The notes under the pieces are model-generated. The model did no database searches and was not told the DNA's origin. It was given only the letters and a program-made list of their open reading frames with translations. Position numbers and translations under genes: made by a program. From the IMG/VR virus record IMGVR_UViG_3300040801_004532, positions 1 to 64,000 of that record: a stretch of DNA of 64,000 bases; one strand, 5' to 3'. Below are positions 14,643 to 52,891 of this stretch, in pieces. Each line of letters begins with the position of its first letter. Position 1 is the first letter of the stretch.

Positions 14643-14662
14643 CTATATATATTAATAACCGA
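14643..14662 (+). promoter_or_regulatory. Putative early promoter CTATATATAT-WAATW-NNN-GA
   Basis: Five identically spaced copies in the window. Confidence 0.55.
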
Positions 14663-14699
14663 AGAGGTGAATTTGTCTTGCGGAATTTAGAAAAGGAAA

Positions 14700-14725
14700 G
14701 GGCGCTTCTACATATAGAAGCGCCC
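14700..14725 (-). terminator. Intrinsic terminator hairpin
   Basis: GGGCGCTTCTA/TAGAAGCGCCC stem, then TTTCCTTTT on the minus strand. Confidence 0.65.
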
Positions 14726-14802
14726 GTAACATGCTAATAACTATCAATGATAACTCATTGGTAATTTATCATATTTTTGTTCTAAAAACAGGAACACATT
14801 AG

Positions 14803-15444
14803 TTACAATCTTTCTAATGCAGAAGAGATATCTTGTATCCTAGGAGGGTTAGCAGTAATCTCAACGATTTTCCATCCATGTTGCTCAAGTTTTAAATTTT
14901 TATTTGGGTCAATATATGCTTCTTTATTATGCCAAAATGTTTTTGGAAATTGTATTACAATCTTCAAAACCGGGTCACAGAAGTCTGTAATGAACTCAAA
15001 CACGATTCTGCCAGCGACCTCCTGCCTTATCATGTAATCTTTTTTTACATTCGTGAAATAGGCTCTAAGAAGGTCAAGTACCTGATCCTTACTATTACAA
15101 CAAATATCATTGGACTTCTTTTCATTAAGCATTTTAGAAAAATCAATTTCTTCTTCAATTTCAGGTTCTACAACTTCAATCTCCTCTCCCATATCTTCAG
15201 GAAGCTCGTCGATCTTTTCAAGTTCTTCTTTTACAAATACTTGTTTTTCCTTCCCGTATTTTGATGAAGCATTAAATTCTTCTGATGAAAGAGGAGCATC
15301 GGGAAATCGTAATTTATATTCAGCATATTTTATTGAGTGGTTAGATGAAAGATGTCTAGGCGAAATCACCAAAAAGGGTTTACCACAAAGCTGACAAATT
15401 ACTCGTCCTTTTTCATCAAAAAATGGGTGCTCATATTCGCTCAT
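14803..15444 (-). CDS. C2H2-type zinc finger plus DUF559/Vsr-like nuclease-fold protein
   Basis: CQLC...HLSSNH; C-terminal TDF.DP.LKIVIQF..TFWH...GWK. Confidence 0.55.
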   Translation of the reverse strand: MSEYEHPFFDEKGRVICQLCGKPFLVISPRHLSSNHSIKYAEYKLRFPDAPLSSEEFNASSKYGKEKQVFVKEELEKIDELPEDMGEEIEVVEPEIEEEIDFSKMLNEKKSNDICCNSKDQVLDLLRAYFTNVKKDYMIRQEVAGRIVFEFITDFCDPVLKIVIQFPKTFWHNKEAYIDPNKNLKLEQHGWKIVEITANPPRIQDISSALERL

Positions 15445-15511
15445 TTCATTTCTCCTTATAAATTAATATTCAAACACAATTTAATATTTGTTCTAAAATG
15501 GAGGCAATCAG

Positions 15512-15985
15512 GTGGACCTACAAAAATTTATTTGGAGGAAAATTTTGAATGTAGAACAAAATCCACTTCTAGTATTAAACATTGATGAGAAGCTCCCATA
15601 TCATTTTATAATAGGAGTAGCGATACATACTATGAGATCTAAGGAACGTGGAAAAATGTTTCTTAAATATGGACCGCTAAGATTTACTAATGATGATATA
15701 AAAAGACTACAAAACGCAGCGTTATTATCAACCGATAAATTATTCAAAACATCACAGCTAGATTGTATCAAAATTGCAAATGTTGAAGAATTAGTTTCAA
15801 CCTTTAGTGCTATGAAATTATCATGTGCTGTAAATCAATGCAGCCTACATCATTTTTCTTCTGAGTATGATATAGAGGATGAATGGTTTGATACGCTTGT
15901 TAAGATGGCGAATACAGATAAGCACTCGGAGGAATTATTGGATAATGCACAAATCAACTATAAACCATTTCACTTCGGACAATGA
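15512..15985 (+). CDS. Hypothetical protein
   Basis: 157-aa ORF, GGAGG SD, GTG start. Confidence 0.6.
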   Translation: MDLQKFIWRKILNVEQNPLLVLNIDEKLPYHFIIGVAIHTMRSKERGKMFLKYGPLRFTNDDIKRLQNAALLSTDKLFKTSQLDCIKIANVEELVSTFSAMKLSCAVNQCSLHHFSSEYDIEDEWFDTLVKMANTDKHSEELLDNAQINYKPFHFGQ

Positions 15986-16454
15986 AGAATATAGTAATTT
16001 TTATCCTGTCGAAGTACAATTCGAAGGAATAGTATATCCTTCAGTTGAACATGCTTTTGTAGCAGCTAAAAGTCTAAATATAATGTTCAGAAAAGAGATT
16101 TCAGAGATGCCAGCTGATTCTGCTGGACTAGCAAAAAGAAAAGGAAGAAAAGTTAAACTACGCCCAGATTGGGATCTGATTAAGTTAAGAGTCATGAGAG
16201 AATTGTTAGATCAAAAATTTAGGCAACCTAAATTTAAAGAGAAACTATTAGCCAGCGGAGATGCTGAAATAATTGAAGGAAACTATTGGCATGATAACTA
16301 TTGGGGTGATTGCTATTGTAAAAAATGTATAAATATAAAAGGAAAAAATCACCTAGGAAGACTTATTATGAAAATAAGAGAGGAAATCAAAAATGAAGAT
16401 CTTAGTAACCGGAGATATACACAACGAGTTCGGACGATTAAACGAACTAATTAA
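15945..16454 (+). CDS. NADAR (YbiA-like) family protein
   Basis: SNFY...YPSVEHAFVAAK...AKRKGR...W...M...KF.Q...LL.SG...IEGN.W.D.YWG...G.N.LG..IM.IR. Confidence 0.9.
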   Translation: MHKSTINHFTSDNEEYSNFYPVEVQFEGIVYPSVEHAFVAAKSLNIMFRKEISEMPADSAGLAKRKGRKVKLRPDWDLIKLRVMRELLDQKFRQPKFKEKLLASGDAEIIEGNYWHDNYWGDCYCKKCINIKGKNHLGRLIMKIREEIKNEDLSNRRYTQRVRTIKRTN

Positions 16455-17070
16455 CAAGAAACAACCTGATATGATAATTTGTTGTGGGGATTTTGGTTAT
16501 TGGCCAAAAATTGAGTCGCTAGAAAAACTATCAAATATCAAACTTCAATCAGCAAAAAAATTGCTATGGTGTGATGGAAATCATGAAGATCATTGGTCTC
16601 TAAAAGAAAGAGAAACAGATGAACTAGCACCAAATATTTTTTATATGCCAAGAGGATCAACATATACTTTAGATGATGGGAGAGTAATCTTATTTATGGG
16701 CGGAGCAGATTCAATTGATAAAGAGTGGAGAAGACTGGGTGTTGATTGGTTTCCAGAAGAAATAATCTCACAAAAAGATTTTGAAAATCTGCCTGATTAT
16801 AATACTAGAATTGATATTATTATTTCACATACATGCCCCGAGTGCTTAGTTGATGAAATGCGAAAAACTTATCCTGAAAAGGGATATGAACCATCTAACA
16901 CAGCATTATCAAGGCTGTTAAATATCTACAAACCAGATTTATGGTTTTTCGGTCACTGGCACAGTTATAGAGAAGGTGTTGTTGAAAACACTAAATGGTA
17001 TGCTCTTTCAGCTCCTGGTTTTGAAACTAGATGGTGGATGTGGTTACCAGAAAGGAGGCGAGTTTTTTAA
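16393..17070 (+). CDS. Calcineurin-like metallophosphoesterase
   Basis: GDIH, GDFG, GNHE, SHT and GHWH motifs. Confidence 0.9.
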   Translation: MKILVTGDIHNEFGRLNELINKKQPDMIICCGDFGYWPKIESLEKLSNIKLQSAKKLLWCDGNHEDHWSLKERETDELAPNIFYMPRGSTYTLDDGRVILFMGGADSIDKEWRRLGVDWFPEEIISQKDFENLPDYNTRIDIIISHTCPECLVDEMRKTYPEKGYEPSNTALSRLLNIYKPDLWFFGHWHSYREGVVENTKWYALSAPGFETRWWMWLPERRRVF

Positions 17071-17119
17071 TTTAATTGCTAGTAAATCTTTTTACAACAA
17101 AACCAAAACGGAGGTCTAA

Positions 17120-18886
17120 ATGACGTTAATCATCATGTTCGTGATCTTTCTACTGGCAGCAATTTTTGTTCCGAAATTCATCCCGGACGTCAAATACAAT
17201 CGTGGATACGATGATGTCCAAACAAAAGATATGGGCTGGATTCGTAATACGGTGCGGGGAGCATGCGTCGTTTTGGCAATCCTATGCTTCCTCAGCATGA
17301 GCTGCTTCACCATTGATTCTGACAGCGTTGGCCATATGAAACGGGTATATTTTGGAGAATCCATGCCCTCTGGCCGGATCATTGCAGATCAAAATCAAAA
17401 GGGGCCGCAGGCAAACATTATCGCTCCTGGATTCCATCTGATGCCATTCATTAAGGTTACCCACGATATCGAAGAACTTCCTTTGATTGAAGTTCCCGAA
17501 GGACAGTATGGGTACCTTGTTGCAAAAGATGGTCGTCCCATGCCCGATGGACAATTCATTGCCTCAGCATGGGAGAATGTAAGTGATATGATCAATGCTG
17601 AAAAATTCATGGGCTACCTGGATGAGTCTGAAACCCCGTTGGGAATCAAAGGTCCCCAACTTACCGTTCTCCCGCCTGGCCAATACCGGGTCAATCGCTA
17701 TTTGTTTGATGTTTATGCCGACACCGCAACAGATGTTCCAATCGGTCATGTGGCCGTGGTCAAGTCCAACGTGGGAGATCATTACAATGGTGATCCGATC
17801 CTTCCGACTGGGGTTGACAAAACCACACTTTCCGTCCCGATTGTTCCGAAAGGACATAAAGGGGTTTGGAACGAAGTTCTTCGGCCGGATCGTTATTACC
17901 TAAACAAAAAAGCATATGATATTATTATCATTCCAACACAGGTTCAAACCTGGAAATATCTAGGAGGATACGAACGTCGTTTTATTGATCTAACCCTAAA
18001 TGACGATGGCAAAATTCAACAACATGTACGAAGCCTTCAGGTTGACATTCCAAAAGATGCAGCCGATGGTTCAGTTCTTCTTCGCGTTGAAAACTGGGAT
18101 GTCTTTCAGGATGCAAGAATCCAGGTTCAGGTCACCCCGGAAAATGCTCCATTTGTTGTTGCAGCAGCGGGAGGAATTTCCGCCATCGAAGACAAAATTA
18201 TGACTCCGACATTTAGGAGTGTTCTTCGTAATGAAGCTGCAAAAAATATTGTAGAAACTACAGAGGTAAAGGGTAAAGAAACAAAAATCAGTCGCCCAAG
18301 AAGAGTTCTTGATCTTCTTTATAAAAGAGAGGGCCTGGAAAGTGCAGTCGAGAGCAAGCTGATTCCAGAAGGCGAGAAATATGGTCTGACAGTTATGGAA
18401 GTCAGATTTGGGGATCCGGTTGTTCCTCCCGAACTATTGGTTCCTGGCAAAAGAAAACAGCTCGCCGAATCCTTGATGGCAACCTATAAACAGGAGCAAG
18501 AAGCGCAAATCAAGCGTGTTGAATCTGAACGAGAACGAGCCCGAGCAGATCAGCAACCTGTCCTGATGAAATCTGAGATTGGAATCAAGGTGGCTGACAA
18601 TGAAAAGAAAGCCCGAATCAAACGAGGTGAAGGTGAAGAAGCTTATTTGAAAGCTGTCGCCAACGGGCAAAGGGCTCAGGCTACTGTACTCGGGCAGGAT
18701 CGTGCCTTCGAACTGGCATATGTTGAAAAGATCCTTGAAGCAGCAGTTAAAAATCCGGAGATTATCAAATACCCCGGAACACTCGTCATGGGATCAACTG
18801 GCGGGTTTGAAGGTGCAGCAGCAATTCTCGGTCGAAGCAATCTCAATATGGGACTGGCAACCCCCGTGCCTGCTGTAACCAAGTAG
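17120..18886 (+). CDS. SPFH/band-7 (flotillin-like) membrane protein
   Basis: Two N-terminal TM segments, repeated PGxY/H beta units, SPFH-like core, C-terminal coiled coil. Confidence 0.8.
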   Translation: MTLIIMFVIFLLAAIFVPKFIPDVKYNRGYDDVQTKDMGWIRNTVRGACVVLAILCFLSMSCFTIDSDSVGHMKRVYFGESMPSGRIIADQNQKGPQANIIAPGFHLMPFIKVTHDIEELPLIEVPEGQYGYLVAKDGRPMPDGQFIASAWENVSDMINAEKFMGYLDESETPLGIKGPQLTVLPPGQYRVNRYLFDVYADTATDVPIGHVAVVKSNVGDHYNGDPILPTGVDKTTLSVPIVPKGHKGVWNEVLRPDRYYLNKKAYDIIIIPTQVQTWKYLGGYERRFIDLTLNDDGKIQQHVRSLQVDIPKDAADGSVLLRVENWDVFQDARIQVQVTPENAPFVVAAAGGISAIEDKIMTPTFRSVLRNEAAKNIVETTEVKGKETKISRPRRVLDLLYKREGLESAVESKLIPEGEKYGLTVMEVRFGDPVVPPELLVPGKRKQLAESLMATYKQEQEAQIKRVESERERARADQQPVLMKSEIGIKVADNEKKARIKRGEGEEAYLKAVANGQRAQATVLGQDRAFELAYVEKILEAAVKNPEIIKYPGTLVMGSTGGFEGAAAILGRSNLNMGLATPVPAVTK

Positions 18887-18937
18887 AATGAAAAGGTGGG
18901 AGGGGAGTATTCCTCCCACCTTTCCCAAGGAGCTAAA

Positions 18938-19324
18938 ATGTCAGATCAAATTTATATTGGAGCATTTGATGGGTCTGCAAAACCAAATCCTGGCGAAATA
19001 ACAATTGGCGGATGGATTGCAGATTCTGATAAAAAAACGCTTATTTCATTTACCGAAAAAATCGGCTATGGTACAAACAATGAAGCAGAATATCTAGCAT
19101 TTATAAGGCTCCTAAAGGAGGCAAAAGGATTAGGGATTAAAAAATTATCAATAAAGGGAGATTCCTCATTAGTTGTAAATCAAATAAACGGCACATGGAA
19201 AATAAAAGAACCAAGGATGAAGGAGTTAAACAATAAGGCCCATTCTATTATGGAAGGAATGGTTATAAAACTAACTCATGTAAAACGAAAATTTAACATC
19301 GTTGCAGACTCACTAACCAGGTAA
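18938..19324 (+). CDS. rnhA: Ribonuclease HI
   Basis: FDGSAKPNPG, TNNEAEY, GDSSLVVNQ, HVKR..N..AD motifs. Confidence 0.9.
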   Translation: MSDQIYIGAFDGSAKPNPGEITIGGWIADSDKKTLISFTEKIGYGTNNEAEYLAFIRLLKEAKGLGIKKLSIKGDSSLVVNQINGTWKIKEPRMKELNNKAHSIMEGMVIKLTHVKRKFNIVADSLTR

Positions 19325-19381
19325 CCTTGGAATACAACAGTTTCCTTGCATGGTTATCAATTTCAAAGAAAGGATTTCAAC

Positions 19382-20236
19382 ATGCGTATCGAATTGCTAA
19401 TTATTGATCCACAGAATGATTTTTGCTGGCCGGGACTTAACCCGATTGAAGTTTCAGATGAAGGCAAACGAGTCCTTCCTTCTGAAGTATTCAAACCGGG
19501 CGCCCTTTATGTTCCGGGGGCAGAAGAAGACATGACCAGGGTGGCTGCCATGGTTCGGCGCCTGAAGGACAAACTGGACGACATCCACATCACCTTGGAC
19601 AGCCATCACTACATCGACATCGCCCATCCTCCGTTTTGGATTTCTTCCAGCGGAAAGAATCCGGATCCGTTTACCATCATCACAAAAGATGATGTGGCGA
19701 ACGGAGTGTGGCGAGCAACCAACCCCCAATTCCAGGATCGTGTGATGGAATATGTCACACAACTGGAAGTGAACGCCCGTTACCCGTTATGCATCTGGCC
19801 GGTCCATTGTGTCATCGGGAGCTGGGGCTATGGGGTATTTCCGGACCTACTCAAAGCCATCTTGGAGTGGGAATCGGATTTTGCCATGGCAGACTATGTA
19901 ACAAAGGGATCGAATCTTTGGACGGAACATTACAGTGCGGTTCAAGCAGATGTCCCGGATCCCGAAGATCCCGACACCCAGCTCAACATGCGCCTCATCG
20001 AAACCCTCCAGGAGGCAGATGAAATCATCCTGGTCGGCGAGGCAAGATCACATTGCCTTGCCAATACGGTCATCGACATCGCAAACAATTTCGGGGAGGA
20101 AAACATCAAAAAGATGGTTCTCCTTGAAGATGGGTCAAGCGATGTCCCCGGCTTTGAAAACCTTGGGGAGGATTTCGTCAAAGAAATGAAGGGCCGAGGC
20201 ATGCGTATTTCGACCACCACGGAATATCTAAAATGA
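19382..20236 (+). CDS. Nicotinamidase/isochorismatase-family cysteine hydrolase
   Basis: IIDPQNDF, LDSH, WPVHC, KG, GEARSHC catalytic motifs. Confidence 0.85.
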   Translation: MRIELLIIDPQNDFCWPGLNPIEVSDEGKRVLPSEVFKPGALYVPGAEEDMTRVAAMVRRLKDKLDDIHITLDSHHYIDIAHPPFWISSSGKNPDPFTIITKDDVANGVWRATNPQFQDRVMEYVTQLEVNARYPLCIWPVHCVIGSWGYGVFPDLLKAILEWESDFAMADYVTKGSNLWTEHYSAVQADVPDPEDPDTQLNMRLIETLQEADEIILVGEARSHCLANTVIDIANNFGEENIKKMVLLEDGSSDVPGFENLGEDFVKEMKGRGMRISTTTEYLK

Positions 20237-20466
20237 AAGGGGGCGGGGAGATAGACTTCATCGCTTCCGATTTAGAAGATCTCCACAGAATCAAGTGGAT
20301 AGCAATTCATAACCCTCATCGAGGGTTGCCACTTGATCGCTCCCCCGAACTCACAGAAGACGACCGAGTTATTTTAGATTTTGAATGTAAAGTTATCAAT
20401 TGCTGCAAAAAAGGCAAGATACCAGCTCAAATAACCATCGAAGATGCTAAGCTGATACAGGGGTGA
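20233..20466 (+). CDS. Hypothetical protein
   Basis: 77-aa ORF whose start overlaps the upstream stop. Confidence 0.5.
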   Translation: MKGGGEIDFIASDLEDLHRIKWIAIHNPHRGLPLDRSPELTEDDRVILDFECKVINCCKKGKIPAQITIEDAKLIQG

Positions 20467-20469
20467 CAT

Positions 20470-20721
20470 ATGTACTTTGTTTGTCATTATTGGGATAATG
20501 GAAATGATTTTTGGATCTCGCCATGCAGTAAACCAGAAGACGTAATCAACTATATTGAATCGTTTGAGCTTGATCCCAAGGATTACTATATTATAAAGGG
20601 ACGAATGCTAAAAGGAATTGAAAATACTTCTTTTAACCTGGTAACTTTCAAGGAGAATGAATATGCCAAGACTGATGGCGACAACGGAGGATCAGGTAAT
20701 CAAGATACCGGGTCCGGGTAA
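20470..20721 (+). CDS. Hypothetical protein
   Basis: 83-aa ORF within the operon. Confidence 0.5.
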   Translation: MYFVCHYWDNGNDFWISPCSKPEDVINYIESFELDPKDYYIIKGRMLKGIENTSFNLVTFKENEYAKTDGDNGGSGNQDTGSG

Positions 20722-21421
20722 CTTCCAATTTTCGGCGATTCGAATCGAGGATCTCGGAGCAACAGAATACACCCTGGCCACCCTGGTGGTTGATATTTCA
20801 GGAAGTGTAACCACATTTGCCGATGAGCTACTCGACTGTATCAAAACAATCATCAAAGCATGTCAAAAGAATCCGCGAGCAGAAAATATGCTGGTTCGCC
20901 TCCTTCTGTTCAATGAAAAAATTTATGAAATACATGGTTTCAAAAATCTATCAGATATTGATGTAAACAACTATGAGGCTCTTCGCCCAGACGGATTTAC
21001 AGCTCTATATGATGCAACTTATGATGCAATCGGCGCAACCCTGGAATACTCCAAACGATTGGTTGACCAGGATTTCGATTGCAATGGCGCCGTTTATATT
21101 GTGACGGATGGTATGAACAACCGGGGTAAGATGACCCCAAGTGCAATCGCCCAAAAGATCGGCGAAGCGGTTCATAACGAAGAGATTGAATCGCTTATTT
21201 CAATCCTTGTTGGGCTGCATGATCCCAATAGTTCATGGGAACAGGAGGTTCGGGAATCCTTGGAGATGTTCCACGAGAAAGCAAACCTCACGGAATTTCT
21301 GGACATCGGCGAAGCAACACCACAAAAGCTGGCCAAGTTGGCCGGTTGGGTAAGCGAAAGCGTCAGCAGCCAAAGCCAGGCACTCGGCAGCGGCGCTCCA
21401 AGCCAAACCCTCCAGTTCTAA
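20657..21421 (+). CDS. vWA domain protein (TerY-like)
   Basis: MIDAS motif DISGS, G.TALYDA, VTDG. Confidence 0.85.
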   Translation: MNMPRLMATTEDQVIKIPGPGNFQFSAIRIEDLGATEYTLATLVVDISGSVTTFADELLDCIKTIIKACQKNPRAENMLVRLLLFNEKIYEIHGFKNLSDIDVNNYEALRPDGFTALYDATYDAIGATLEYSKRLVDQDFDCNGAVYIVTDGMNNRGKMTPSAIAQKIGEAVHNEEIESLISILVGLHDPNSSWEQEVRESLEMFHEKANLTEFLDIGEATPQKLAKLAGWVSESVSSQSQALGSGAPSQTLQF

Positions 21422-21524
21422 TGTTTAGAATAATGAACATTAAATAGGTTAATGATGTATATAATGAACATTAAACCGAAAACGGGGGGAGGCAACTCCC
21501 CCCATAAATCTTAGGGAGTAGAAA

Positions 21525-21905
21525 ATGAAAAAAAGTCAGTTGATTGAAACGATTTATCGAAGCAAATTGACCAAAACGAACAAGTCGACAAAGGTCAAAA
21601 AGGGCGTTATGGTGGCCCAACATACAGATGGATATACAGTCGGGATCGGTTTCTCCATGTGTCACAGGAGAGATCGATTTGATTATCATCCCGGAACAGG
21701 TCAAAGAACCCCCGGATGGGGAAAAACGGTAGCAGCCGAAAGGGCCGAAAAGTGGAAGGATCGACTATCAATTGAAATTCCCCAAAGCATTGAACCGGAA
21801 ATGAAAGACTTTATCGGTCGGTGCCGTCGTTATTTCAAAGACAAGGTACTTCCGCCATGGGCCGAAATCCTGATTAACCAGGAATGTGAAAACCCAAAAG
21901 AATAA
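21525..21905 (+). CDS. Hypothetical protein
   Basis: 126 aa; GFSMC...D.F....GK..A..RA motif. Confidence 0.6.
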   Translation: MKKSQLIETIYRSKLTKTNKSTKVKKGVMVAQHTDGYTVGIGFSMCHRRDRFDYHPGTGQRTPGWGKTVAAERAEKWKDRLSIEIPQSIEPEMKDFIGRCRRYFKDKVLPPWAEILINQECENPKE

Positions 21906-21915
21906 AGGAGATGTT

Positions 21916-23031
21916 ATGACCCAGCCCAAAATTGTTGCAAAATCGCTCAAGACCATTCTGGAGGATCCGGGGGTTCAATGTATTTTGGACCGGTCCTGCA
22001 ATCTTTCCGACGAACTAATTAACGAGGTTCAAGGCTGGTGGGGGTATGATCTGTTCAATAGAAAACCCAGCCCTGCATATGATGAATACGGGGTTTTCTC
22101 CGGCACCGACCTTGACCTGGCATGCTTCCTTTATTCCCTTTCGGGACGCGGTGCAGTTATCAACATCCCCACATACAAATCCCACACCCAAACCAAACTT
22201 CGGGAAGACCAAATGGTCACCTCCAAGGCAAATCGCCATGGCGAAGTTCTTGGTGTTGGTGCCAACAAAATTTTCTTTTCCTTCAACGTCACCATTATGG
22301 ATCAGAATGTTGTCGGGGAAGAAAAGGTTGGCGATTTTCGGACCTTCTCATTAACCGACAAACTCGGTGACTGGTATGATGGGTGGCAGCGAATCGAGTT
22401 CGTGCCAACCCTCAAAGAAAATCGGTTTATCACCGAAAACAAACTATGGACGGGAAGCAAGATCATTTTCAAAAATTTCATTCATCCGAATCGGTGGACA
22501 TCCATGTTCGGTCGGCATTACGTGATCACGAAAATGCTGATCGACCGCCTGGAGGATGAATGTAAATTCATTCAGGCCGAAATCAAGCGAATCCAGGCAG
22601 CCGGAATTGAATTTCCAGAGGGCGAAGGCCCCATAAAATATTCATATGATTATGGAAAGGGTGTTCAGAAAAAATTCCCGGCGTTTGAAACAATGATCTT
22701 TATTCCAGATACCGAAATCAAGGAAGATTATGATTTCTATCCCACCGACCAGGAAGGATTGGTCAATGCATACAACCGACGGAAGCGACTCCTCTATGGC
22801 GTCATTCCTTCACTTCGATTCATGACCAGGGCCTCAGAATTTGCCCATTACAAACATCCGGATCGTTTTCCGGCATGGATGCGTGGGACAAAATGGGAGG
22901 AAGATTTTACCATCCCCGGGAAACGAATCAAGTGGCAACGGCTGAAACTATTTCAACCCAAGGTCGGAACCCAATCAATATCAATCCTGAAACGATCGTT
23001 CGAAAAATCGGCGACAGTTTCAGGCGATTAA
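21916..23031 (+). CDS. Hypothetical protein (GC-richer codon usage)
   Basis: 371 aa from ATG behind AGGAG. Confidence 0.7.
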   Translation: MTQPKIVAKSLKTILEDPGVQCILDRSCNLSDELINEVQGWWGYDLFNRKPSPAYDEYGVFSGTDLDLACFLYSLSGRGAVINIPTYKSHTQTKLREDQMVTSKANRHGEVLGVGANKIFFSFNVTIMDQNVVGEEKVGDFRTFSLTDKLGDWYDGWQRIEFVPTLKENRFITENKLWTGSKIIFKNFIHPNRWTSMFGRHYVITKMLIDRLEDECKFIQAEIKRIQAAGIEFPEGEGPIKYSYDYGKGVQKKFPAFETMIFIPDTEIKEDYDFYPTDQEGLVNAYNRRKRLLYGVIPSLRFMTRASEFAHYKHPDRFPAWMRGTKWEEDFTIPGKRIKWQRLKLFQPKVGTQSISILKRSFEKSATVSGD

Positions 23032-23044
23032 TTTGATACTCGTA

Positions 23045-23077: not shown

Positions 23078-23109
23078 ATACTAAACAGGCTTTTAAATAG
23101 GAGGTTGAG

Positions 23110-23325: not shown

Positions 23326-23343
23326 TACTACCAGGAAGGGAAA

Positions 23344-26975: not shown

Positions 26976-26995
26976 CTATATATATAAATATTTGA
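26976..26995 (+). promoter_or_regulatory. Putative early promoter
   Basis: CTATATATATAAATATTTGA. Confidence 0.55.
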
Positions 26996-27035: not shown

Positions 27036-27485
27036 TTGGAAATCAAAGGATTGAAGGCGACCCAGAAAGAACTAACTTTTATGAAAGGGGGTGAAAGAGT
27101 GAAAAGAGAAGTAAGGTACAGGGGAATCAGCAACGCAGTTCGTCGGGCAATCGCCAGAAGTGAAATAAGCGGCGAAATCAAAATCCAGGATGTACGGGCA
27201 AAACTCGATGCCAGCAAATGCAGCGCCCCGGAAAAAGTGATCGAAAAATCTCTGTCGTATCTCGCCAACAACGGCGAAATCATTGCCGGGAAAAATGGTC
27301 GATTCTTTACCAAGGACAGTTTGAAGTCAGAGTCGACACCGTCTGCTGTCAATAAGGAATCCCGTTCGGGGATGCTTTTGGGAGCAGGAGATTCGGCCCT
27401 GGTGTCCGGCAAGATCACCTCCATGAGCTATGAAGAGGGGAAGGTGATCGCCACGGTTGAGGTTAAGTCGCTGGATTTGGCTTAA
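27036..27485 (+). CDS. Hypothetical protein, possibly winged-helix DNA-binding (start uncertain)
   Basis: GC-richer ORF between the promoter motif and a terminator. Confidence 0.55.
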   Translation: MEIKGLKATQKELTFMKGGERVKREVRYRGISNAVRRAIARSEISGEIKIQDVRAKLDASKCSAPEKVIEKSLSYLANNGEIIAGKNGRFFTKDSLKSESTPSAVNKESRSGMLLGAGDSALVSGKITSMSYEEGKVIATVEVKSLDLA

Positions 27486-27515
27486 CTCAACCAAACTAAG
27501 AGATTGAGAAAAGAA

Positions 27516-27546
27516 ATGCTCGGGAATCCCCCCGGGCATTTTTTTT
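27516..27546 (+). terminator. Intrinsic terminator
   Basis: ATGCTCGGG/CCCGGGCAT stem plus T-run. Confidence 0.7.
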
Positions 27547-27560
27547 GGAAGGAAAATGAA

Positions 27561-28171: not shown

Positions 28172-28191
28172 CTATATATATAAATTAATGA
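28172..28191 (+). promoter_or_regulatory. Putative early promoter
   Basis: CTATATATATAAATTAATGA. Confidence 0.55.
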
Positions 28192-28229: not shown

Positions 28230-28571
28230 ATGCTTTACTGTGACGGTTGTGCAAAGGCAAATGGGCATGAAATTACCAGCCAAAAACAGAAAGGTGAATG
28301 TGAATTGTGTCGCCGGCGTCTTGGAACCATGAATGTCATGCCAGACAATGTGGTTGATAGCCACATCAACAACGTCAAAAAGGAAGATTTCTCAGCGGCT
28401 GGGATCAAGGTTAAGCAGGTCCCCGGATTTGTTCCGGGAACAAATCTGGATGCAATTGAGCCGGGTGCACCCCACAGATTCCTCAGCGAAACCAAGGTAC
28501 TGTTTCATCAATCAAACCGGTTAATCATCGCGGATATGGAGTCCGGAAAAAGAGTTGAAATTAATTTCTAA
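28230..28571 (+). CDS. Hypothetical zinc-binding protein
   Basis: CDGC...CELC; AGGAG SD. Confidence 0.6.
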   Translation: MLYCDGCAKANGHEITSQKQKGECELCRRRLGTMNVMPDNVVDSHINNVKKEDFSAAGIKVKQVPGFVPGTNLDAIEPGAPHRFLSETKVLFHQSNRLIIADMESGKRVEINF

Positions 28572-28581: not shown

Positions 28582-28625
28582 AAAAAAGACCCGAGCCTGA
28601 TTTCTCAAGCCCGGGTCTTTTTTTT
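28582..28625. terminator. Bidirectional intrinsic terminator
   Basis: AAAAAAGACCCG...CGGGTCTTTTTTTT between convergent genes. Confidence 0.8.
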
Positions 28626-44478: not shown

Positions 44479-44490
44479 TATCTATTCCTT

Positions 44491-45124: not shown

Positions 45125-45133
45125 CTCCCTTCA

Positions 45134-45805
45134 TTATACAAATCCATAAATTATATGGTCTCTCGATGAAAAGCTGAAACCATATTTCTCGCAAATATCA
45201 AAAACAGCTGCAGAATTTTTAATGAGATCTACCCTGGTTGTTCCCTCAGGCATAACCCAAACTCTATGGTTCCAACTAAGGTTTTTATAATTAGCGGAAA
45301 TATTGGCCAAAAACTTTTCAATCAACGGACTATCATCATATACAACTTTTATATAAACTTCTGGAAAACTTTCTAGAAGTTTAACATTTTGTAGTGCTGA
45401 TGATAGATCACTATCATTAAAGATTTTTGGCGAATAAACATATCTAACATGTTTATCAGGAGAAACCTCTTGAATTAACTGGAACAATTTATACCCATTT
45501 GATTCAACATTTGCAATTGGATAGTCCAGCTCATTAAGTAATAAAGCGGCTTCATCAAAATGTTTTGGAACCGTTGGTTCTCCACCTGTAATCAAAAGTC
45601 CTGCATTTGTTCTATAAATTGTATCTTGAATATCTGAAAGAAGATGCGGAGCCTCTGCTGAGATTCTCATTTTTACAGAGGTATCACACCAAGGACATTT
45701 CAGATTACAAGTCTTAAATCTGAGAATGATCATTGGTCGCCCGCTATCAATTCCTTCGCCTTGCCATGAAATAAAATTTTCGATTAATTTAACACTTTTA
45801 CTCAT
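45134..45805 (-). CDS. queE: 7-carboxy-7-deazaguanine synthase (radical SAM)
   Basis: E.F.SWQGEG..G....LR...CNLKCPWCDT, ITGGEP, ESNG, SPK. Confidence 0.85.
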   Translation of the reverse strand: MSKSVKLIENFISWQGEGIDSGRPMIILRFKTCNLKCPWCDTSVKMRISAEAPHLLSDIQDTIYRTNAGLLITGGEPTVPKHFDEAALLLNELDYPIANVESNGYKLFQLIQEVSPDKHVRYVYSPKIFNDSDLSSALQNVKLLESFPEVYIKVVYDDSPLIEKFLANISANYKNLSWNHRVWVMPEGTTRVDLIKNSAAVFDICEKYGFSFSSRDHIIYGFV

Positions 45806-45840
45806 TTATAATTTCCCCTTTCGTTTATTGTTTGTTCTGA

Positions 45841-49080: not shown

Positions 49081-49154
49081 ATAAATGCCTCCTCAGTTTA
49101 GTTTTGATTTTGTTCCGATTAAAAAAATAATTAACCATTTAAAAAAACATTCAT

Positions 49155-49174
49155 CTATATATATTAATAAGTGA
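49155..49174 (+). promoter_or_regulatory. Putative early promoter
   Basis: CTATATATATTAATAAGTGA. Confidence 0.55.
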
Positions 49175-49221
49175 AAGTAGGTTGGGCGCCTAATATTTAT
49201 TACCGAAGAAAGGAGAACAGC

Positions 49222-50043
49222 ATGACCGAACATGAAACGACAGCAATTACCAAGCAAGACGTGGAAAAGGTTGTGTCAGTGATTTCGATCAATGACGCAG
49301 AAAAAATCCTCGGAATCAAAAACGAGCCTCCGTACGACATCAAAAAGCTCCTCCATGAGTATCACATCGGTTTTGAAGTTCTCATGGAAAACCGCGAGTT
49401 CAAAAAGCTTCGCCCTTTGACGGATGCCAAGAATATCATTCTTCGGCACCTCATCGAGAACCAAGTCGAAGAGAACGGCCGGTTCGACATGGAAGGGGTT
49501 ATTCCGTTTGAAGATGCTTGCACGTCTTGCCACGGCACCGGGGAATTATATAAATTCTTCCGGCGAGTCGTCACCCTCGATTGCAAATTCTGCGAGGGCG
49601 AGGGTGAAGTTACTTTAGAGTGCCGGGCCTGCGGCGGATCCGGTCGCTATATACGAGAGTACGGCGACCTGAAGATCGATGTGGCTTGCAAAAAATGCGA
49701 CAAAGATCCCGAAACCGGCGACCCCCTTGGGGTTGTGACTTACAAATGCCGGCGGTGTCGGGGAAAAGGAACATTCCGGAAAACCGTGATTGACAGCAAG
49801 ATCAAATCCACGACCCATTGTAAGGTTTGCAAGGGCCGGGGGTTCATCGTTCCGGATGATCGGTTCCCTCCCCGAAGGGGTCAAACGATTCAAATTGCCA
49901 ACCCGGTCATCAAGGAAAGCGACCTTGAATCAATCGGAAGCGTCATCAAGGAAAGCAAGCCGGAAGCGGCCGAAATCTCCATCGAGGAAGACAACCTGGA
50001 ATCACTCGAAAGCGCCATCAAGGATTCCCCCGCAAGCGAATAA
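49222..50043 (+). CDS. Multi-CxxCxGxG (DnaJ central domain-like) zinc-finger protein without a J-domain
   Basis: Six CxxC units; AAGGAG SD; GC-richer. Confidence 0.7.
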   Translation: MTEHETTAITKQDVEKVVSVISINDAEKILGIKNEPPYDIKKLLHEYHIGFEVLMENREFKKLRPLTDAKNIILRHLIENQVEENGRFDMEGVIPFEDACTSCHGTGELYKFFRRVVTLDCKFCEGEGEVTLECRACGGSGRYIREYGDLKIDVACKKCDKDPETGDPLGVVTYKCRRCRGKGTFRKTVIDSKIKSTTHCKVCKGRGFIVPDDRFPPRRGQTIQIANPVIKESDLESIGSVIKESKPEAAEISIEEDNLESLESAIKDSPASE

Positions 50044-50091
50044 TTAATCTCTGGTGCCCAACCAGGCAATGAATGGAGGAGCATTTCAAAG

Positions 50092-50634
50092 CTATTGTAA
50101 CTCAATAGTCGAGAAATGCTCCTCCATTAGTTTTTTAACAGACATTTTTTCGCTTTTTATTTTTTTCTGTTTTTTTAACTTTTTCTTTTTTGGTTTCTCA
50201 ATTCCCAATGTATCGAAAACCATATCACGTTCATCTGACTTTTCAATTATATCACATAGTAAATATAAATCATCATTTTTCAAATAGGGAATTTTTTCCC
50301 TTAATTTTTCATATAAAATAACCCTTGGCTTTCTTGGATAAAATGTTATATCTCGCCTAGTTATCCGGAAATCACGAACACATCTTTTTATAAAATACAA
50401 TAACTCTTCTCTGCTTAAATATCTTAAATTAATATCATTAAAATATCTATCTAAATATTTATTCAACGGACCATTCTTTAAAAACATTGAAATAACAAAT
50501 GTGTGTGTAATCGGAGAATTATATTTTAAAATATCAGGAGTTATAACCTTACCATTCTCATCTGTTTTTTGTTTTGGTATCTTAGTTTCTCTTCTCCCGT
50601 CAAACAACCAGTTATTAAAAGTTTTGAATGGCAT
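50092..50634 (-). CDS. Hypothetical replication-region protein (possibly clamp-loader small subunit)
   Basis: 180 aa; functional guess from context only. Confidence 0.45.
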   Translation of the reverse strand: MPFKTFNNWLFDGRRETKIPKQKTDENGKVITPDILKYNSPITHTFVISMFLKNGPLNKYLDRYFNDINLRYLSREELLYFIKRCVRDFRITRRDITFYPRKPRVILYEKLREKIPYLKNDDLYLLCDIIEKSDERDMVFDTLGIEKPKKKKLKKQKKIKSEKMSVKKLMEEHFSTIELQ

Positions 50635-50636
50635 TA

Positions 50637-50909
50637 TTAATAATCCTTTAAAAATCTCAATAAAATTCCATCACGCAAACCTTTATTACCACAATTATGA
50701 TTAACTAAAAAAGTATCGTCTGATAAATCAACTTTGATCTTTATATTGTATATATCTAATTTGTTAGGTTCACTATTATCTTCTCCGGCTCCAATCTGAC
50801 TTCTTAAAAAATTTTCAACAATATTTGGGACTGCCTCTTTTTTCATATTTGTTGAAATATCAAAACTATCTTTGTTAATATCATATTTCAACTCAACAAA
50901 CAAATTCAT
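50637..50909 (-). CDS. Hypothetical protein
   Basis: 90 aa; start overlaps the glycosyltransferase stop. Confidence 0.55.
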   Translation of the reverse strand: MNLFVELKYDINKDSFDISTNMKKEAVPNIVENFLRSQIGAGEDNSEPNKLDIYNIKIKVDLSDDTFLVNHNCGNKGLRDGILLRFLKDY

Positions 50910-51904
50910 TAAATTGCCCCTTTCATTTCATTACAAATCACATCATAGAATTTATTCATTTGTTCCTCACATAACAGTTTTGGAACATCAACCTTTGGCA
51001 CCCAATCAACATTTGCATTTAGAATATAATCTATTTTTCTCATTAGTTCTCCGGAGGAGTTATACAAGTATTCATCAGGCAGTAGTTCTGGATATGCTAA
51101 ATCTCTCCTAGCCAAAGGGATACAATTATTCATTACAGCATCAACAATTTGATAACCAAATGTATCCTCATGAGCTGTAATCAATAATATTTTTGACGAT
51201 CTCAAATTATAAAAATAATCATACCATGTATATGAAATAGGTCTTTTAATTTCACAGAAAGTATCCTCAACCAATTTCTCAAGAGATTCATCAATCTTCT
51301 GTGGGTTTGATCTTGAGGCTGACATAATTTCAATTGTTTTTTCTATTTCAGGAAAATCAAATTCTAGTGGGGGAAATGGTAAATAAGATACCATTATATT
51401 CCTCCAGTGTGCATCATTTCCAAAGACACTATGGCCACCAACTCTTAGTTTATTTTTATGATAACAACTTCCAACAAAAATCTTATCAAACATTCTACAT
51501 ATGCTTGATTCAATTGGAAATTTATCAGACCTAACTTTTCCATAATAATCTAAAACATTCAATGATGTTGCATGACAAAAAGCATACATTTTCTTTGGGC
51601 GTTTGTGAAATAAAACATGACCAAAAATTCCTGGAAAGCTAATATCCGCCCAAAATAAAATATCATCATCCTTCAAATCTAAATTCATATACTCGTTGAT
51701 TTGAGCTGTTTCAAGTTCAATGGCTTGATTTATTGGAGAGAACATATCTAATCCGCTTCGTCTATGAACCATCTCCTTAATTTTATCTCTCCCAAGAGTT
51801 AGTACCTCAAACCCTCGTTTTTCAAATTCTTCTGGCAGTTTCCAGAACCACCATTCAGAATATCTTAAAGCTGATGGAAATTGTGGTACAAAGATTATTC
51901 TCAC
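50909..51904 (-). CDS. GT-B (GT4-like) glycosyltransferase
   Basis: C-terminal TAHEDTFGYQIVDAV...CIPL....LAYPE...EYLY donor-binding region. Confidence 0.75.
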   Translation of the reverse strand: MRIIFVPQFPSALRYSEWWFWKLPEEFEKRGFEVLTLGRDKIKEMVHRRSGLDMFSPINQAIELETAQINEYMNLDLKDDDILFWADISFPGIFGHVLFHKRPKKMYAFCHATSLNVLDYYGKVRSDKFPIESSICRMFDKIFVGSCYHKNKLRVGGHSVFGNDAHWRNIMVSYLPFPPLEFDFPEIEKTIEIMSASRSNPQKIDESLEKLVEDTFCEIKRPISYTWYDYFYNLRSSKILLITAHEDTFGYQIVDAVMNNCIPLARRDLAYPELLPDEYLYNSSGELMRKIDYILNANVDWVPKVDVPKLLCEEQMNKFYDVICNEMKGAI

Positions 51905-52107
51905 TTTCCCTTCCTTTCATTGATTAAATCTGGAATAGGTAAAGGCTTTCTATATTCACAATATAAACAAAGGTCTTGCATATTTACCACTTTTTCAGCA
52001 TTACACTTACCTTTAAAAGTACACCAATCATCCCTTGTTATCTGAAGTGAAACCCAACCTCCTAACCTTTTTACAGACCCCCCTGTACAAGTTGGACCAT
52101 TCGACAT
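51901..52107 (-). CDS. Small Cys-rich protein
   Basis: 68 aa, GGAGG SD. Confidence 0.5.
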   Translation of the reverse strand: MSNGPTCTGGSVKRLGGWVSLQITRDDWCTFKGKCNAEKVVNMQDLCLYCEYRKPLPIPDLINERKGK

Positions 52108-52339
52108 TTGAAAAACCTCCTACCCATTTAGAATAATTATATAGATTAAATAAAATTAAAACTGCCATTTGAATTAAGAGGAACCAATGAGTTTTTTGAT
52201 AAAAAATATATGCTTGGCACAAAAGACTAATATTAAACACCATGAAACCAGCAGGGCGCTTCTCTCCAATGAGATAAAGTCCAATTAATGTTGTGATAAG
52301 GGAAACTATTTCTAACCACCTTAGAAGATCCATTTGCAA
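52028..52339 (-). CDS. Small membrane protein, PnuC-like half transporter
   Basis: Three hydrophobic segments; G.YL...K...GF...Q......N.Y....W pattern. Confidence 0.5.
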   Translation of the reverse strand: MQMDLLRWLEIVSLITTLIGLYLIGEKRPAGFMVFNISLLCQAYIFYQKTHWFLLIQMAVLILFNLYNYSKWVGGFSNVEWSNLYRGVCKKVRRLGFTSDNKG

Positions 52340-52791
52340 TATCCTTCATAAAGTATATATTTCTTTTCATATTTCCAAAGGGATTTTTGACTGGGGTAAA
52401 TTTTATTGAGATAGTCTTCTTTTACTGTTGGGAAAGCTACCTTATGAACATAATGAGCAATCATATTAACCGAGTAAAAAATCACATCTTCTTTTGAGCG
52501 TCTGGCCAATGATTCTCCAATCGCTCCAAACTCTCTATGATCCGGTTGATATTCATAAACAGGATCTGGAAAATAAAAGGTATTGTTTTGACCTAGAAAT
52601 CGGTCTGGAATTTTGTCTTCAAAAATAGTGGTTACTTGAAAATTTTTGGCTAGATTTTCTGTTTCTCTTCTTCTTTCATCTGAAGTACTCTTTGGATAAA
52701 TAACAACAGTTGATCTACTTGAAGTTAAAACCTCAAAACAGCCAATTAATTCATCATCTGGATGTGGTGCAACAATGACAATTTCGCTCAT
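52321..52791 (-). CDS. PIG-L/LmbE-family N-acetyl-sugar deacetylase
   Basis: VAPHPDDE..G, R..E, PDH, Y.SQ. Confidence 0.8.
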   Translation of the reverse strand: MSEIVIVAPHPDDELIGCFEVLTSSRSTVVIYPKSTSDERRRETENLAKNFQVTTIFEDKIPDRFLGQNNTFYFPDPVYEYQPDHREFGAIGESLARRSKEDVIFYSVNMIAHYVHKVAFPTVKEDYLNKIYPSQKSLWKYEKKYILYEGYCKWIF

Positions 52792-52858
52792 ATAAATCTC
52801 CTTTCAATTATTTGTTACTCATTATTAAAAAAAGATCTCTCTCTATACATTCTCATAT

Positions 52859-52891
52859 TTTTATGTTCTAACTATATATATTAATAACTGA
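52859..52891. promoter_or_regulatory. Back-to-back late-type (minus) and early-type (plus) promoter motifs
   Basis: TTTTATGTTCTAA immediately followed by CTATATATATTAATAACTGA. Confidence 0.55.

What the first reader, a model, noticed from the sequence alone, without database searches (positions are those of the whole stretch)
14643..52891. Second motif CTATATATAT-WAATW-NNN-GA heads GC-richer plus-strand units
Seen: five copies with identical spacing at 14643, 26976, 28172, 49155 and 52872. Four precede visibly GC-richer units (27036, 28230, 49222 and the 52908 RNA). Three sit back-to-back with a divergent late-type motif. Inference: an early promoter class without a -35 box, possibly read by a virion-packaged RNA polymerase, with early genes tuned to a higher-GC host.
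Basis: partly seen in the sequence, partly recalled or inferred. Interest (0 to 1): 0.6.

Follow-up and report, generated by a model that had tools for sequence, protein, structure and literature searches.

The report
Early promoter class of a jumbo phage
The repeated 20-base AT-rich motif is real and is most likely the early-gene promoter of an uncultured 248-kb phage that carries two RNA polymerases of its own; it closely resembles the known early promoter of Bacillus phage AR9, and in this phage it heads short gene cassettes whose codons are unusually GC-rich.

Summary
The motif has 5 exact copies in the window against 0 expected by chance. The window's 248,136-bp contig holds 13 copies, all on the + strand and all intergenic, with no weaker copies.

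The motif is invariant at matching positions in related uncultured phage contigs (DNA polymerase 54-71% identical) while the flanks diverge. The genome is a jumbo phage with a T4-like capsid protein and DNA polymerase, about 28 tRNAs, and two sets of unsplit beta'/beta RNA polymerase genes. No sigma-70 or T4 gp55 homologue was found.

The motif aligns base for base with the mapped AR9 virion-RNA-polymerase early promoter (AAATATATATTAT-N6-G+1). That places the start site at the conserved G/A of TGA. A Shine-Dalgarno site and start codon follow 40-50 nt later, and several units end at intrinsic terminators.

The GC-richness is real: GC3 is 0.56 against 0.25 in the rest. It is confined to coding sequence and to this lineage. 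An orthologous gene ranges from GC3 0.16 to 0.73 among relatives, and 75 sites across the family show no rise.

Early timing, the start site and virion packaging are inferred by analogy. No RNA data exist. I classify it as a new member of a known kind.

The parts
14643..14662 (+). Early-type promoter copy 1 (CTATATATATTAATAACCGA). It points antisense toward the minus-strand gene 14803-15444.
   Evidence: Exact match, weight-matrix score 30.3. The same arrangement is conserved in two relatives.
26976..26995 (+). Early-type promoter copy 2
   Evidence: A Shine-Dalgarno site and start codon lie 60 nt from the motif start.
28172..28191 (+). Early-type promoter copy 3
49155..49174 (+). Early-type promoter copy 4, divergent from the DNA polymerase gene
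   Evidence: CTATATATATTA and TGA are invariant in 8 aligned orthologous intergenic regions whose mean column identity is 44%.
52872..52891 (+). Early-type promoter copy 5, heading a non-coding RNA and the tRNA array
   Evidence: The motif and the downstream RNA are conserved in a relative.
27036..27485 (+). GC-rich early gene (149 aa, GC 0.49, GC3 0.56) with no known family
   Evidence: No homologue in five relatives.
27514..27549 (+). Intrinsic terminator (GC hairpin plus T-run) that closes the 26976 unit
   Evidence: GC falls from 0.47 inside the unit to 0.32 after it.
28230..28571 (+). GC-rich early gene (113 aa, GC 0.46)
28588..28625 (.). Hairpin with A-run and T-run flanks: a two-way terminator that closes the 28172 unit
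49222..50043 (+). GC-rich early gene (273 aa, GC 0.51, GC3 0.61) encoding a multi-CXXC zinc-finger protein of the DnaJ central-domain type
   Evidence: Pfam PF00684. It is orthologous and syntenic in six relatives, where GC3 ranges from 0.16 to 0.73.
52892..53280 (+).
   Evidence: Conserved blocks with frame-breaking indels against a relative. No Rfam family. Folding z-score -2.3.
53842..63455 (+). First 11 tRNA genes of a roughly 28-tRNA array downstream of copy 5
52856..52871 (-). Late-type motif TTAGAACATAAAAATA on the other strand, directly abutting copy 5
49100..49117 (-). Late-type motif variant (GGAACAAAATC) in front of the DNA polymerase gene
   Evidence: A GAACA element is also seen in front of the DNA polymerase gene in several relatives.
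14571..14589 (-). Late-type motif TTTAGAACAAAAATAAAA in front of gene 12690-14498
14700..14725 (.). GC hairpin between convergent early (+) and late-type (-, at 14784) promoters. It is the terminator of the minus-strand gene 14803-15444.

Best explanation
The motif is the core promoter of one temporal class, most likely the early class, of an uncultured jumbo phage that transcribes its genome with its own multisubunit RNA polymerases.

**Proposed mechanism**
- A phage polymerase binds the invariant C-TATATATAT-W-AAT element, centred near -10. No -35 element is involved. By analogy this is a virion-delivered enzyme, and the better candidate is the long-beta set at 155783-162880.
- It starts at the conserved G or A of TGA, motif position 19 or 20.
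- It transcribes a 40-50-nt AT-rich leader, then one to five genes or a non-coding RNA followed by tRNAs. In several units it stops at an ordinary intrinsic terminator.
- A second motif, TTTAGAACAAAAT, serves the capsid, portal, helicase and DNA polymerase genes, and also the long-beta polymerase operon itself.

**Shown versus inferred**
- Shown: the motif, its statistics, its orientation, its conservation, the polymerase genes, the terminators and the codon shift.
- Inferred: the start site, the early timing, which polymerase reads the motif, and virion packaging.

**The GC-rich coding sequences**
- In 7 protein-coding units, plus the GC-rich non-coding RNA behind copy 5, they are best read as a lineage-specific codon-usage shift.
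- Early cassettes avoid the A-ending codons served by the phage's own tRNAs.
- That tRNA array is itself launched from one of these promoters.
For: **Motif statistics**
- 5 copies in the window against 0 expected.
- 13 sites in the genome, all + strand and intergenic, with a bimodal score distribution.
- The sites head 7 of about 9 minus-to-plus strand junctions.
- A Shine-Dalgarno site and start codon lie at fixed short range. Among 75 sites in other contigs, 64 have a Shine-Dalgarno-like site within +30 to +110.

**Conservation**
- In 8 orthologous intergenic regions, CTATATATATTA and TGA are invariant against 44% mean column identity.
- A 244-kb relative has 17 hits on one strand and 3 on the other; the control pattern gave 2 and 1.
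- All 10 multi-hit IMG/VR loci carry their copies on one strand.

**Polymerases**
- Two beta'/beta sets, both with the NADFDGD motif. A distant relative also has two sets.
- No Sigma70_r2 or gp55 homologue.
- Sigma-70-like sites are not enriched: 56 against 50.6, and 43 against 38.5.

**Match to AR9**
- The AR9 early promoters were mapped by dRNA-seq and primer extension and are chloramphenicol-independent. Their consensus is AAATATATATTAT-N6-G+1 (PMC5312081).
- Read from the AR9 record, two of the three promoters read continue ...ATAATTGA. They share ATATATATTA and a TGA at nearly the same distance.
- The second motif contains the AACA core of AR9 late promoters.

**Unit structure and polymerase context**
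- Terminators close several units.
- The long-beta set has a late-type promoter at -489, conserved at -504/-505 in relatives. This fits a late-made virion component.

**Gene content**
- The units carry ORFans, a Dda-like helicase, tRNAs and a zinc-finger protein.
Against: - No transcript data exist for this phage. Only one DNA metagenome run holds part of it.
- The canonical scheme needs the non-virion polymerase genes to be early. Here the short-beta set has no early motif within 10 kb in 80 relatives: 1 hit in 1.6 Mb. In this genome the nearest one lies 30 kb upstream.
- The long-beta set lies 2.7 kb behind an early motif as well as behind a late-type one, so the two roles could be reversed.
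- No homologue of the AR9 gp226 specificity subunit was found.
- The polymerases are unsplit and only 21-24% identical to the AR9 beta subunit.
- The contig is estimated to be 79% complete, so a missing sigma-like gene cannot be excluded.
Confidence: 0.62

Rival explanations
1. It is a promoter for a phage polymerase, but not for a virion-packaged one. A polymerase made after infection, perhaps the short-beta set with an unidentified specificity factor, reads it, so the class is middle or delayed-early. The very first genes would then be transcribed by the host enzyme or from some other signal.
For: - Neither polymerase operon lies directly behind the motif.
- The short-beta set sits in a long co-directional block with neither motif within 10 kb upstream in the 47 full-length relative loci.
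- Only 13 sites serve 248 kb.
Against: - No sigma-70-like promoter enrichment and no sigma-family gene were found.
- The motif closely matches the AR9 virion-polymerase promoter rather than any non-virion class.
- The long-beta set has a conserved late-type promoter, as expected for a packaged enzyme.
Confidence: 0.2
2. It is a host-polymerase promoter: a strong extended -10-only site read by the host's housekeeping sigma factor, or by a small phage sigma like T4 gp55, whose target TATAAATA is contained in several copies.
For: - Six of the 13 sites contain TATAAATA or TATAAATT.
- The capsid protein and DNA polymerase are T4-like.
- Two sites score 9 of 12 as sigma-70-like.
Against: - No gp55 or Sigma70_r2 homologue was found.
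- The structural genes, which T4-type late promoters serve, carry the other motif.
- A 15-base invariant core with a fixed C and TGA is unlike sigma-70 promoter sets.
- There is no -35 signal.
Confidence: 0.1
3. It is not a promoter. It is the conserved end of mobile GC-rich gene cassettes, or a binding site for a regulator or a replication or recombination protein.
For: - Several units look like self-contained cassettes (motif, gene, terminator) whose composition differs from the surrounding genome.
- Some of their genes are absent from relatives.
Against: - Four sites head ordinary AT-rich operons and two head RNA genes.
- The site opposite the DNA polymerase gene is syntenic in 8 genomes and precedes an orthologous gene.
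- Orientation and distance to the start codon are fixed.
- The motif matches a promoter that has been mapped experimentally in AR9.
Confidence: 0.05

Closest known systems
Early (virion RNA polymerase) promoters of Bacillus phage AR9/PBS1: AAATATATATTAT-(6N)-G+1 (PMC5312081; review PMC7598289)
   Same: - It shares a 10-base alternating core (ATATATATTA), followed 7-8 bases later by a conserved G within TGA.
- It has no -35 element, its copies are highly uniform, and it often sits back-to-back with a divergent non-early promoter.
- The genome has two multisubunit polymerases.
- The second promoter class contains AACA.
   Different: - It has a fixed C two bases upstream of the shared core (motif position 1), an extra A (TTAAT against TTAT), and a spacing one base shorter.
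- There are 13 sites against 41 in AR9.
- The polymerase subunits are unsplit and very divergent, at 21-24% identity.
- The capsid protein and DNA polymerase are T4-like rather than phiKZ/AR9-like.
- No uracil-DNA evidence was sought.
phiKZ and phiR1-37 early promoters (AT-rich element of about 10 nt near -10, with the start site 6 nt downstream; PMC7598289)
   Same: It has the same general architecture, and the genome has the same two-polymerase logic.
   Different: The sequence differs. phiKZ late promoters (TATG) are unlike the GAACAAAAT motif found here.
mReC, the metagenomic Caudovirales lineage with deeply branching unsplit beta and beta' subunits (PMC7481178)
   Same: - The beta and beta' subunits are unsplit, and the capsid protein's only Pfam hit is PF07068.
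- The paper's tables list contigs from the same metagenome as one of our relatives, with subunits of 999 and 903 aa.
   Different: - The main text of that paper contains no mention of promoters, and none of 'virion' or 'copies'.
- Placement of this phage in that tree was not tested.
T4 late promoter TATAAATA read by gp55
   Same: It is a -10-only AT-rich element, the octamer is present in some copies, and the core genes are T4-like.
   Different: No gp55 homologue was found, and the motif does not precede structural genes.

Membership tests
Jumbo-phage virion-RNA-polymerase early promoters (AR9/phiKZ kind) | The genome encodes two multisubunit RNA polymerases | tested here: met
   The beta'/beta pairs lie at 155783-162880 and 194018-199680 (PHROGs and Pfam). 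A 244-kb relative also has two sets.
Jumbo-phage virion-RNA-polymerase early promoters (AR9/phiKZ kind) | A highly conserved AT-rich element of about 10-13 nt with no -35 box, found upstream of presumed early operons | tested here: met
   The element aligns with the AR9 consensus.
Jumbo-phage virion-RNA-polymerase early promoters (AR9/phiKZ kind) | A transcription start about 6-7 nt downstream of the element | not testable with these tools
   No RNA runs hold this phage. A conserved G/A sits at the expected distance.
Jumbo-phage virion-RNA-polymerase early promoters (AR9/phiKZ kind) | [quoted passage not shown] | not testable with these tools
   This needs infection time courses with chloramphenicol or rifampicin, and virion proteomics.
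Jumbo-phage virion-RNA-polymerase early promoters (AR9/phiKZ kind) | Non-virion polymerase genes lie behind early promoters | tested here: inconclusive
   The short-beta set has no early motif within 10 kb in 80 relatives. The long-beta set has one 2.1-3.8 kb upstream in three of the five closest relatives (2.7 kb in this genome) plus a late-type motif at about -500.
phiKZ-like phages (as a phage group) | [quoted passage not shown] | tested here: not met
   Beta' is a single ORF of 999 or 888 aa, beta of 1361 or 999 aa. The DNA polymerase is a single 1079-aa ORF.
mReC lineage (PMC7481178) | Unsplit beta and beta' together with a Gp23-type (PF07068) capsid protein | tested here: met
   The paper's tables list contigs from the same metagenome with matching subunit sizes.
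mReC lineage (PMC7481178) | Placement inside the mReC clade in a polymerase phylogeny | not tested
   No tree was built.
T4-type late promoters (gp55-dependent) | A gp55-like sigma factor is encoded | tested here: not met
   No match at E up to 10. The contig is estimated to be 79% complete.
T4-type late promoters (gp55-dependent) | The promoter precedes late structural genes | tested here: not met
   The capsid gene is preceded by the GAACA motif, and the capsid, portal and tail-fibre genes lie on the strand that has no copy of this motif.
Sigma-70/sigma-A promoters | -35 and -10 hexamers at 16-18 nt spacing | tested here: not met
   There is no information upstream of the motif. Sigma-70-like sites are not enriched.

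The most novel reading that the evidence does not exclude
In this lineage the early class is also a codon class.
- Cassettes behind the motif have been recoded toward C- and G-ending, host-like codons, so they can be translated on arrival.
- The bulk of the genome uses A-ending codons served by the phage's own near-complete tRNA set.
- That tRNA set is itself launched from an early promoter (copy 5).
- tRNA supply would then act as a second, translational timer on top of the two-polymerase cascade.
- The GC3 swing of one orthologous early gene, from 0.16 to 0.73 among relatives, would then track host changes.
Probability: 0.3. Interest if true: 0.7.

Novelty: new member of a known kind. Interest (0 to 1): 0.55.

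Why it matters
- It gives a concrete, testable transcription map (an early motif, a late-type motif and terminators) for a large uncultured phage family. More than 300 IMG/VR contigs carry its polymerase. The one study of the lineage this family may belong to, mReC, did not examine promoters.
- The early element nearly matches that of AR9, and the late element shares its AACA core. This holds despite unsplit, very divergent polymerases and a T4-like virion and replication core.
- That suggests the two-polymerase programme and its promoter grammar are older and more widespread than the phiKZ/AR9 group.
- The family may preserve an unsplit form of these enzymes.
- The codon-shifted early cassettes offer a natural test of whether phages adapt early genes to host translation while covering late genes with their own tRNAs.

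Tried and rejected
**Searches that found nothing useful**
- Megablast of 16 kb against the phage collection found no match. The nearest cultured hits are only about 26% identical at protein level.
- Rfam found no family for the RNA behind copy 5 or for the region behind the 163775 site, apart from a tRNA. A 19-mer from that RNA found only one true homologue, too few for covariation.
- The sequencing-run search found no RNA run, only a partial DNA holder from freshwater sediment. I therefore did not use read laying, because contigs cannot show transcript starts.
- Searches for Sigma70_r2, T4 gp55 and AR9 gp226 in the genome were all negative. These are weak negatives for such divergent proteins.

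**Host and origin of the GC-rich genes**
- A search of bacterial genomes with the GC-rich SPFH protein found only 23-29% identical homologues across several phyla. The host is not identified.
- Two GC-rich early proteins have no homologue in five relatives.
- One of them has only unnamed metagenomic homologues. One of these sits in a related phage fragment, in a GC-richer stretch that begins about 1 kb downstream of the same motif.

**Ideas rejected**
- TAG recoding, suggested by a tRNA with anticodon CTA: TAG-ending genes read through no more often than TAA-ending ones. The standard code was used throughout.
- A family-wide GC rise behind the motif: 0.340 against 0.337, p = 0.83.

**Technical notes**
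- My own terminator finder was too strict, so terminators were read by eye.
- A k-mer hunt for a third promoter class upstream of the short-beta polymerase found only conserved coding motifs.
- Searches returned no answer. One search was re-run, and one search was replaced by the alignment tool.


Full report

The pattern CTATATATATWAATWNNNGA occurs exactly five times in the window, at 14643, 26976, 28172, 49155 and 52872, all on the + strand. None of 100 dinucleotide-preserving shuffles gave a match.

The window is the first 64 kb of a single 248,136-bp contig with 35.2% GC. Across the whole contig there are 11 exact copies and two one-base variants, at 96170 and 153044. All are on the + strand.

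A weight matrix built from these 13 sites scores them at 26.7-33.8. Nothing else exceeds 14, and the strongest of those weak hits are palindromic echoes of two true sites. All 13 sites are intergenic. The class is therefore sharply defined.

Upstream of the C there is only A/T richness and no -35-like signal.

**2. What is the genome?**

PHROG and Pfam scans show:
- tail fibres, a T4-type major capsid protein (PF07068), a portal protein, a DnaB-like helicase and a T4-like family B DNA polymerase, all on the minus strand of the window;
- about 28 tRNAs, a tmRNA and a tRNA with anticodon CTA on the plus strand between 53.8 and 82.8 kb;
- outside the window, two complete sets of unsplit multisubunit RNA polymerase genes.

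The polymerase sets are:

| Set | beta' | beta |
|---|---|---|
| Long-beta | 999 aa, 155783-158782 | 1361 aa, 158795-162880 |
| Short-beta | 888 aa, 194018-196684 | 999 aa, 196681-199680 |

 The two sets are old paralogues, 31% identical in beta' and 24% in beta. Both keep the NADFDGD catalytic motif.

No Sigma70_r2 domain and no T4 gp55 homologue was found. Sigma-70-type promoter matches are at the level of shuffled sequence: 56 against 50.6, and 43 against 38.5.

No cultured phage is close. The only sequencing run holding part of the contig is a freshwater sediment metagenome, and no RNA run holds it.

**3. Where do the sites sit?**

A crude gene map of 340 ORFs covering 91% of the contig shows that the sites head 7 of about 9 major minus-to-plus strand junctions: 49155, 52872, 91274, 96170, 120584, 221860 and 229872. 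The remaining sites lie inside plus-strand blocks.

For 9 of the 13 sites a strong Shine-Dalgarno site (AAGGAGG type) and a start codon begin 58-71 nt after the motif start, which leaves a 38-51-nt leader.

Two sites head RNA genes:
- 52872 is followed by about 390 nt of GC-rich sequence and then the tRNA array. That sequence is conserved with a relative, with indels that break any reading frame. It has no Rfam family.
- 163775 is followed by a tRNA.

Several units end at textbook intrinsic terminators, a GC hairpin followed by a T-run. In the window these lie near 27514-27549 and 28588-28625. Elsewhere they lie near 96948, 149792, 151470 and 230930.

**4. The second motif**

K-mer enrichment in upstream regions recovers TTTAGAACAAAAT, with core GAACAAAAT. 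It lies on both strands in front of:
- the capsid gene (31496),
- the helicase gene (39165),
- the DNA polymerase gene (49115),
- parts of the tRNA region,
- the long-beta polymerase operon (155297).

At 52872, 96170 and 229872 the two cores touch.

**5. Comparative evidence**

Nine IMG/VR contigs encode a DNA polymerase 54-71% identical to ours.

In eight aligned orthologous intergenic regions between the DNA polymerase gene and the divergent gene, mean column identity is 44%. Within them CTATATATATTA, TGA and the Shine-Dalgarno GGAG are invariant.

A 244.5-kb relative has 17 core hits on one strand and 3 on the other. A reversed control pattern gave 2 and 1. That relative also has two beta genes, in open frames of 1019 and 1363 aa.

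The exact 20-mer occurs in at least 117 IMG/VR stretches. In all 10 loci with more than one copy, the copies share a strand. Of 75 such sites, 64 have a Shine-Dalgarno-like site at +30 to +110.

The short-beta beta' has 303 relatives in IMG/VR, so the family is large.

**6. Comparison with known systems**

In AR9, 41 early promoters were mapped by dRNA-seq and primer extension. They are independent of protein synthesis and were assigned to the virion polymerase. Their consensus is AAATATATATTAT-(6N)-G+1. The late promoters are AACA-(6N)-T-A/G (PMC5312081; review PMC7598289).

I read three annotated early promoters from the AR9 record. They are AAATATATATTAT followed by ATAATTGA or AAAAAAGA.

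Our motif shares the ten-base core ATATATATTA and a conserved G, usually within TGA, seven bases after it. In AR9 the G lies eight bases after the core. By analogy the start site is at motif position 19 or 20.

The GAACAAAAT motif shares the AACA core of AR9 late promoters.

The review notes that every polymerase-encoding jumbo phage has such an AT-rich element of about 10 nt upstream of early operons. This motif is therefore a new member of that kind.

The phage is not phiKZ/AR9-like in other respects. Its polymerase subunits and DNA polymerase are unsplit, and its capsid protein and DNA polymerase are T4-like.

It fits the metagenomic mReC lineage (PMC7481178). That paper's tables list contigs from the same metagenome as one of our relatives, with subunits of 999 and 903 aa. 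The main text of that paper does not mention promoters, 'virion' or 'copies', and a literature search for mReC together with promoter found nothing relevant.

**7. Which polymerase reads the motif?**

This is inferred, not shown.

The long-beta set has a late-type motif 489 nt upstream. In the three closest relatives (two of them near-identical contigs) that motif is conserved at -504/-505. Early motifs lie 2.1-3.8 kb upstream and about 8-10 kb downstream. Late expression fits a packaged enzyme.

The short-beta set hits the AR9 non-virion beta subunit somewhat better: 24.1% identity at E = 7e-26, against 21.5% at 6e-21 for the long-beta set.

The short-beta set has no early motif within 10 kb in 80 relatives, with 1 hit in 1.6 Mb. 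It has few late-type motifs upstream, and I found no third motif. How it is first transcribed is therefore open.

This is the main weakness of the virion-polymerase model. It keeps alive the rival in which the motif is read by a polymerase made after infection.

**8. The GC claim**

The first genes behind the motif have GC 0.40 and GC3 0.38, against 0.35 and 0.27 for all genes (Mann-Whitney p = 0.0014 and 0.0006).

Composition by codon position:

| Gene group | GC1 | GC2 | GC3 |
|---|---|---|---|
| 7 GC-rich early units (16 genes) | 0.524 | 0.421 | 0.559 |
| 4 ordinary early units (9 genes) | 0.442 | 0.321 | 0.273 |
| All other genes of 60 aa or more (293) | 0.445 | 0.347 | 0.245 |

In the GC-rich units ATC, ACC, GCC, TTC, CTG/CTC and CGG rise. 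TTA, AGA, ACA, GCA, CCA, TCA and ATA fall. These falling codons are the ones read by the phage's U34 tRNAs.

The 5' leaders have GC 0.338, and GC drops again after the terminator. The shift is therefore confined to coding sequence, plus the non-coding RNA, and is not regional.

It is not a property of the promoter class:
- Four units (120584, 153044, 163775 and 221860) are ordinary.
- A GC-rich island at 17120-23031 has no motif.
- Across 75 family sites, GC downstream equals GC upstream: 0.340 against 0.337, p = 0.83.

The gene opposite the DNA polymerase gene encodes a multi-CXXC zinc-finger protein (PF00684). It is orthologous and syntenic in six relatives at 27-47% identity, yet its GC3 ranges from 0.16 to 0.73, with 0.61 in our genome. 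For this gene the shift arose in place, so simple import of a foreign gene cannot explain it.

Other GC-rich early genes are lineage-specific. One has a homologue in another related phage fragment, in a GC-richer stretch that begins about 1 kb downstream of the same motif.

Adaptation of early genes to host translation before the phage tRNAs accumulate is a coherent reading. The host is unknown, and acquisition from GC-richer relatives remains possible.

**9. Verdict**

- That it is a promoter: about 0.9.
- That a phage-encoded polymerase reads it: about 0.75.
- That it is the early class read by a virion-delivered enzyme: about 0.6.
- The GC-tuning idea is possible, at about 0.3-0.4, and applies to this lineage only.
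- It is a new member of a known kind. Interest is moderate because it extends AR9-type promoter grammar to a large uncultured lineage with unsplit polymerases and shows a striking codon split.

No other genetic code was used, because TAG recoding was tested and not supported.

Noticed in passing
window 14643-14810: An early-type promoter (+, 14643) and a late-type promoter (-, TAGAACA at 14784) converge on one GC hairpin (14700-14725), just beyond the 3' end of a ROS/MucR-like zinc-finger gene (14803-15444, minus strand). Two relatives keep the same order: motif, hairpin, TAACAT, opposite-strand TAGAACA, gene end. This suggests a conserved pair of short sense and antisense RNAs, or early antisense control of that regulator.
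   Followed up: partly
window 52892-53280: About 390 nt of GC-rich non-coding sequence begins right at the predicted start site of copy 5, ahead of the tRNA array. It has conserved blocks (for example GGGGTTTTCCRGTTTGTAA) and frame-breaking indels against one relative. No Rfam family matches. The only weak hit resembles a group II intron domain 5 (E = 0.012) and is partly deleted in the relative. The folding z-score is -2.3.
   Followed up: partly
window 53842-63455 and G000:C1:64616-82768, 164150-164225: The genome carries a near-complete tRNA set of about 28 genes (no Tyr or Trp tRNA), a tmRNA (68211-68561, tag ADDYYTEVALAA) and a tRNA with anticodon CTA (66784-66860). Stop-codon statistics give no sign of TAG recoding.
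   Followed up: partly
window 17120-23031: A 6-kb GC-richer island (GC 0.44-0.50, apart from one AT-rich ORF) on the + strand has no early motif. It includes an SPFH/Band 7 protein and carries several GC hairpins. Bacterial homologues are only 23-29% identical. Its origin and timing are unexplained.
   Followed up: partly
G000:C1:155783-162880 and 194018-199680 (L011, L007): Two paralogous sets of unsplit beta'/beta RNA polymerase genes are 24-31% identical to each other. The long beta has about 350 extra N-terminal residues. The short-beta set has neither promoter motif within 10 kb upstream in the 47 full-length relative loci, so its first transcription is unexplained.
   Followed up: partly
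window 233-11310 (minus strand): A run of five tail-fibre or tail-protein genes. Three have collagen-like or tail-fibre repeat matches, and the 1272-aa protein shows six repeated matches to one tail-fibre family.
   Followed up: no
G000:C1:191925-192470: An isolated very GC-rich gene (157 aa, GC 0.56) is followed by a strong GC hairpin, inside an AT-rich operon just upstream of the short-beta polymerase genes. It has no early motif and looks like an inserted cassette.
   Followed up: no
L059 (JGI 3300005346 contig), 5563 and 8788: A 13.8-kb related phage fragment with baseplate genes carries the same early motif twice. A GC-richer stretch (0.44-0.48 against about 0.31) begins about 1 kb downstream of the first copy and holds a homologue of a GC-rich early gene of this phage.
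   Followed up: partly
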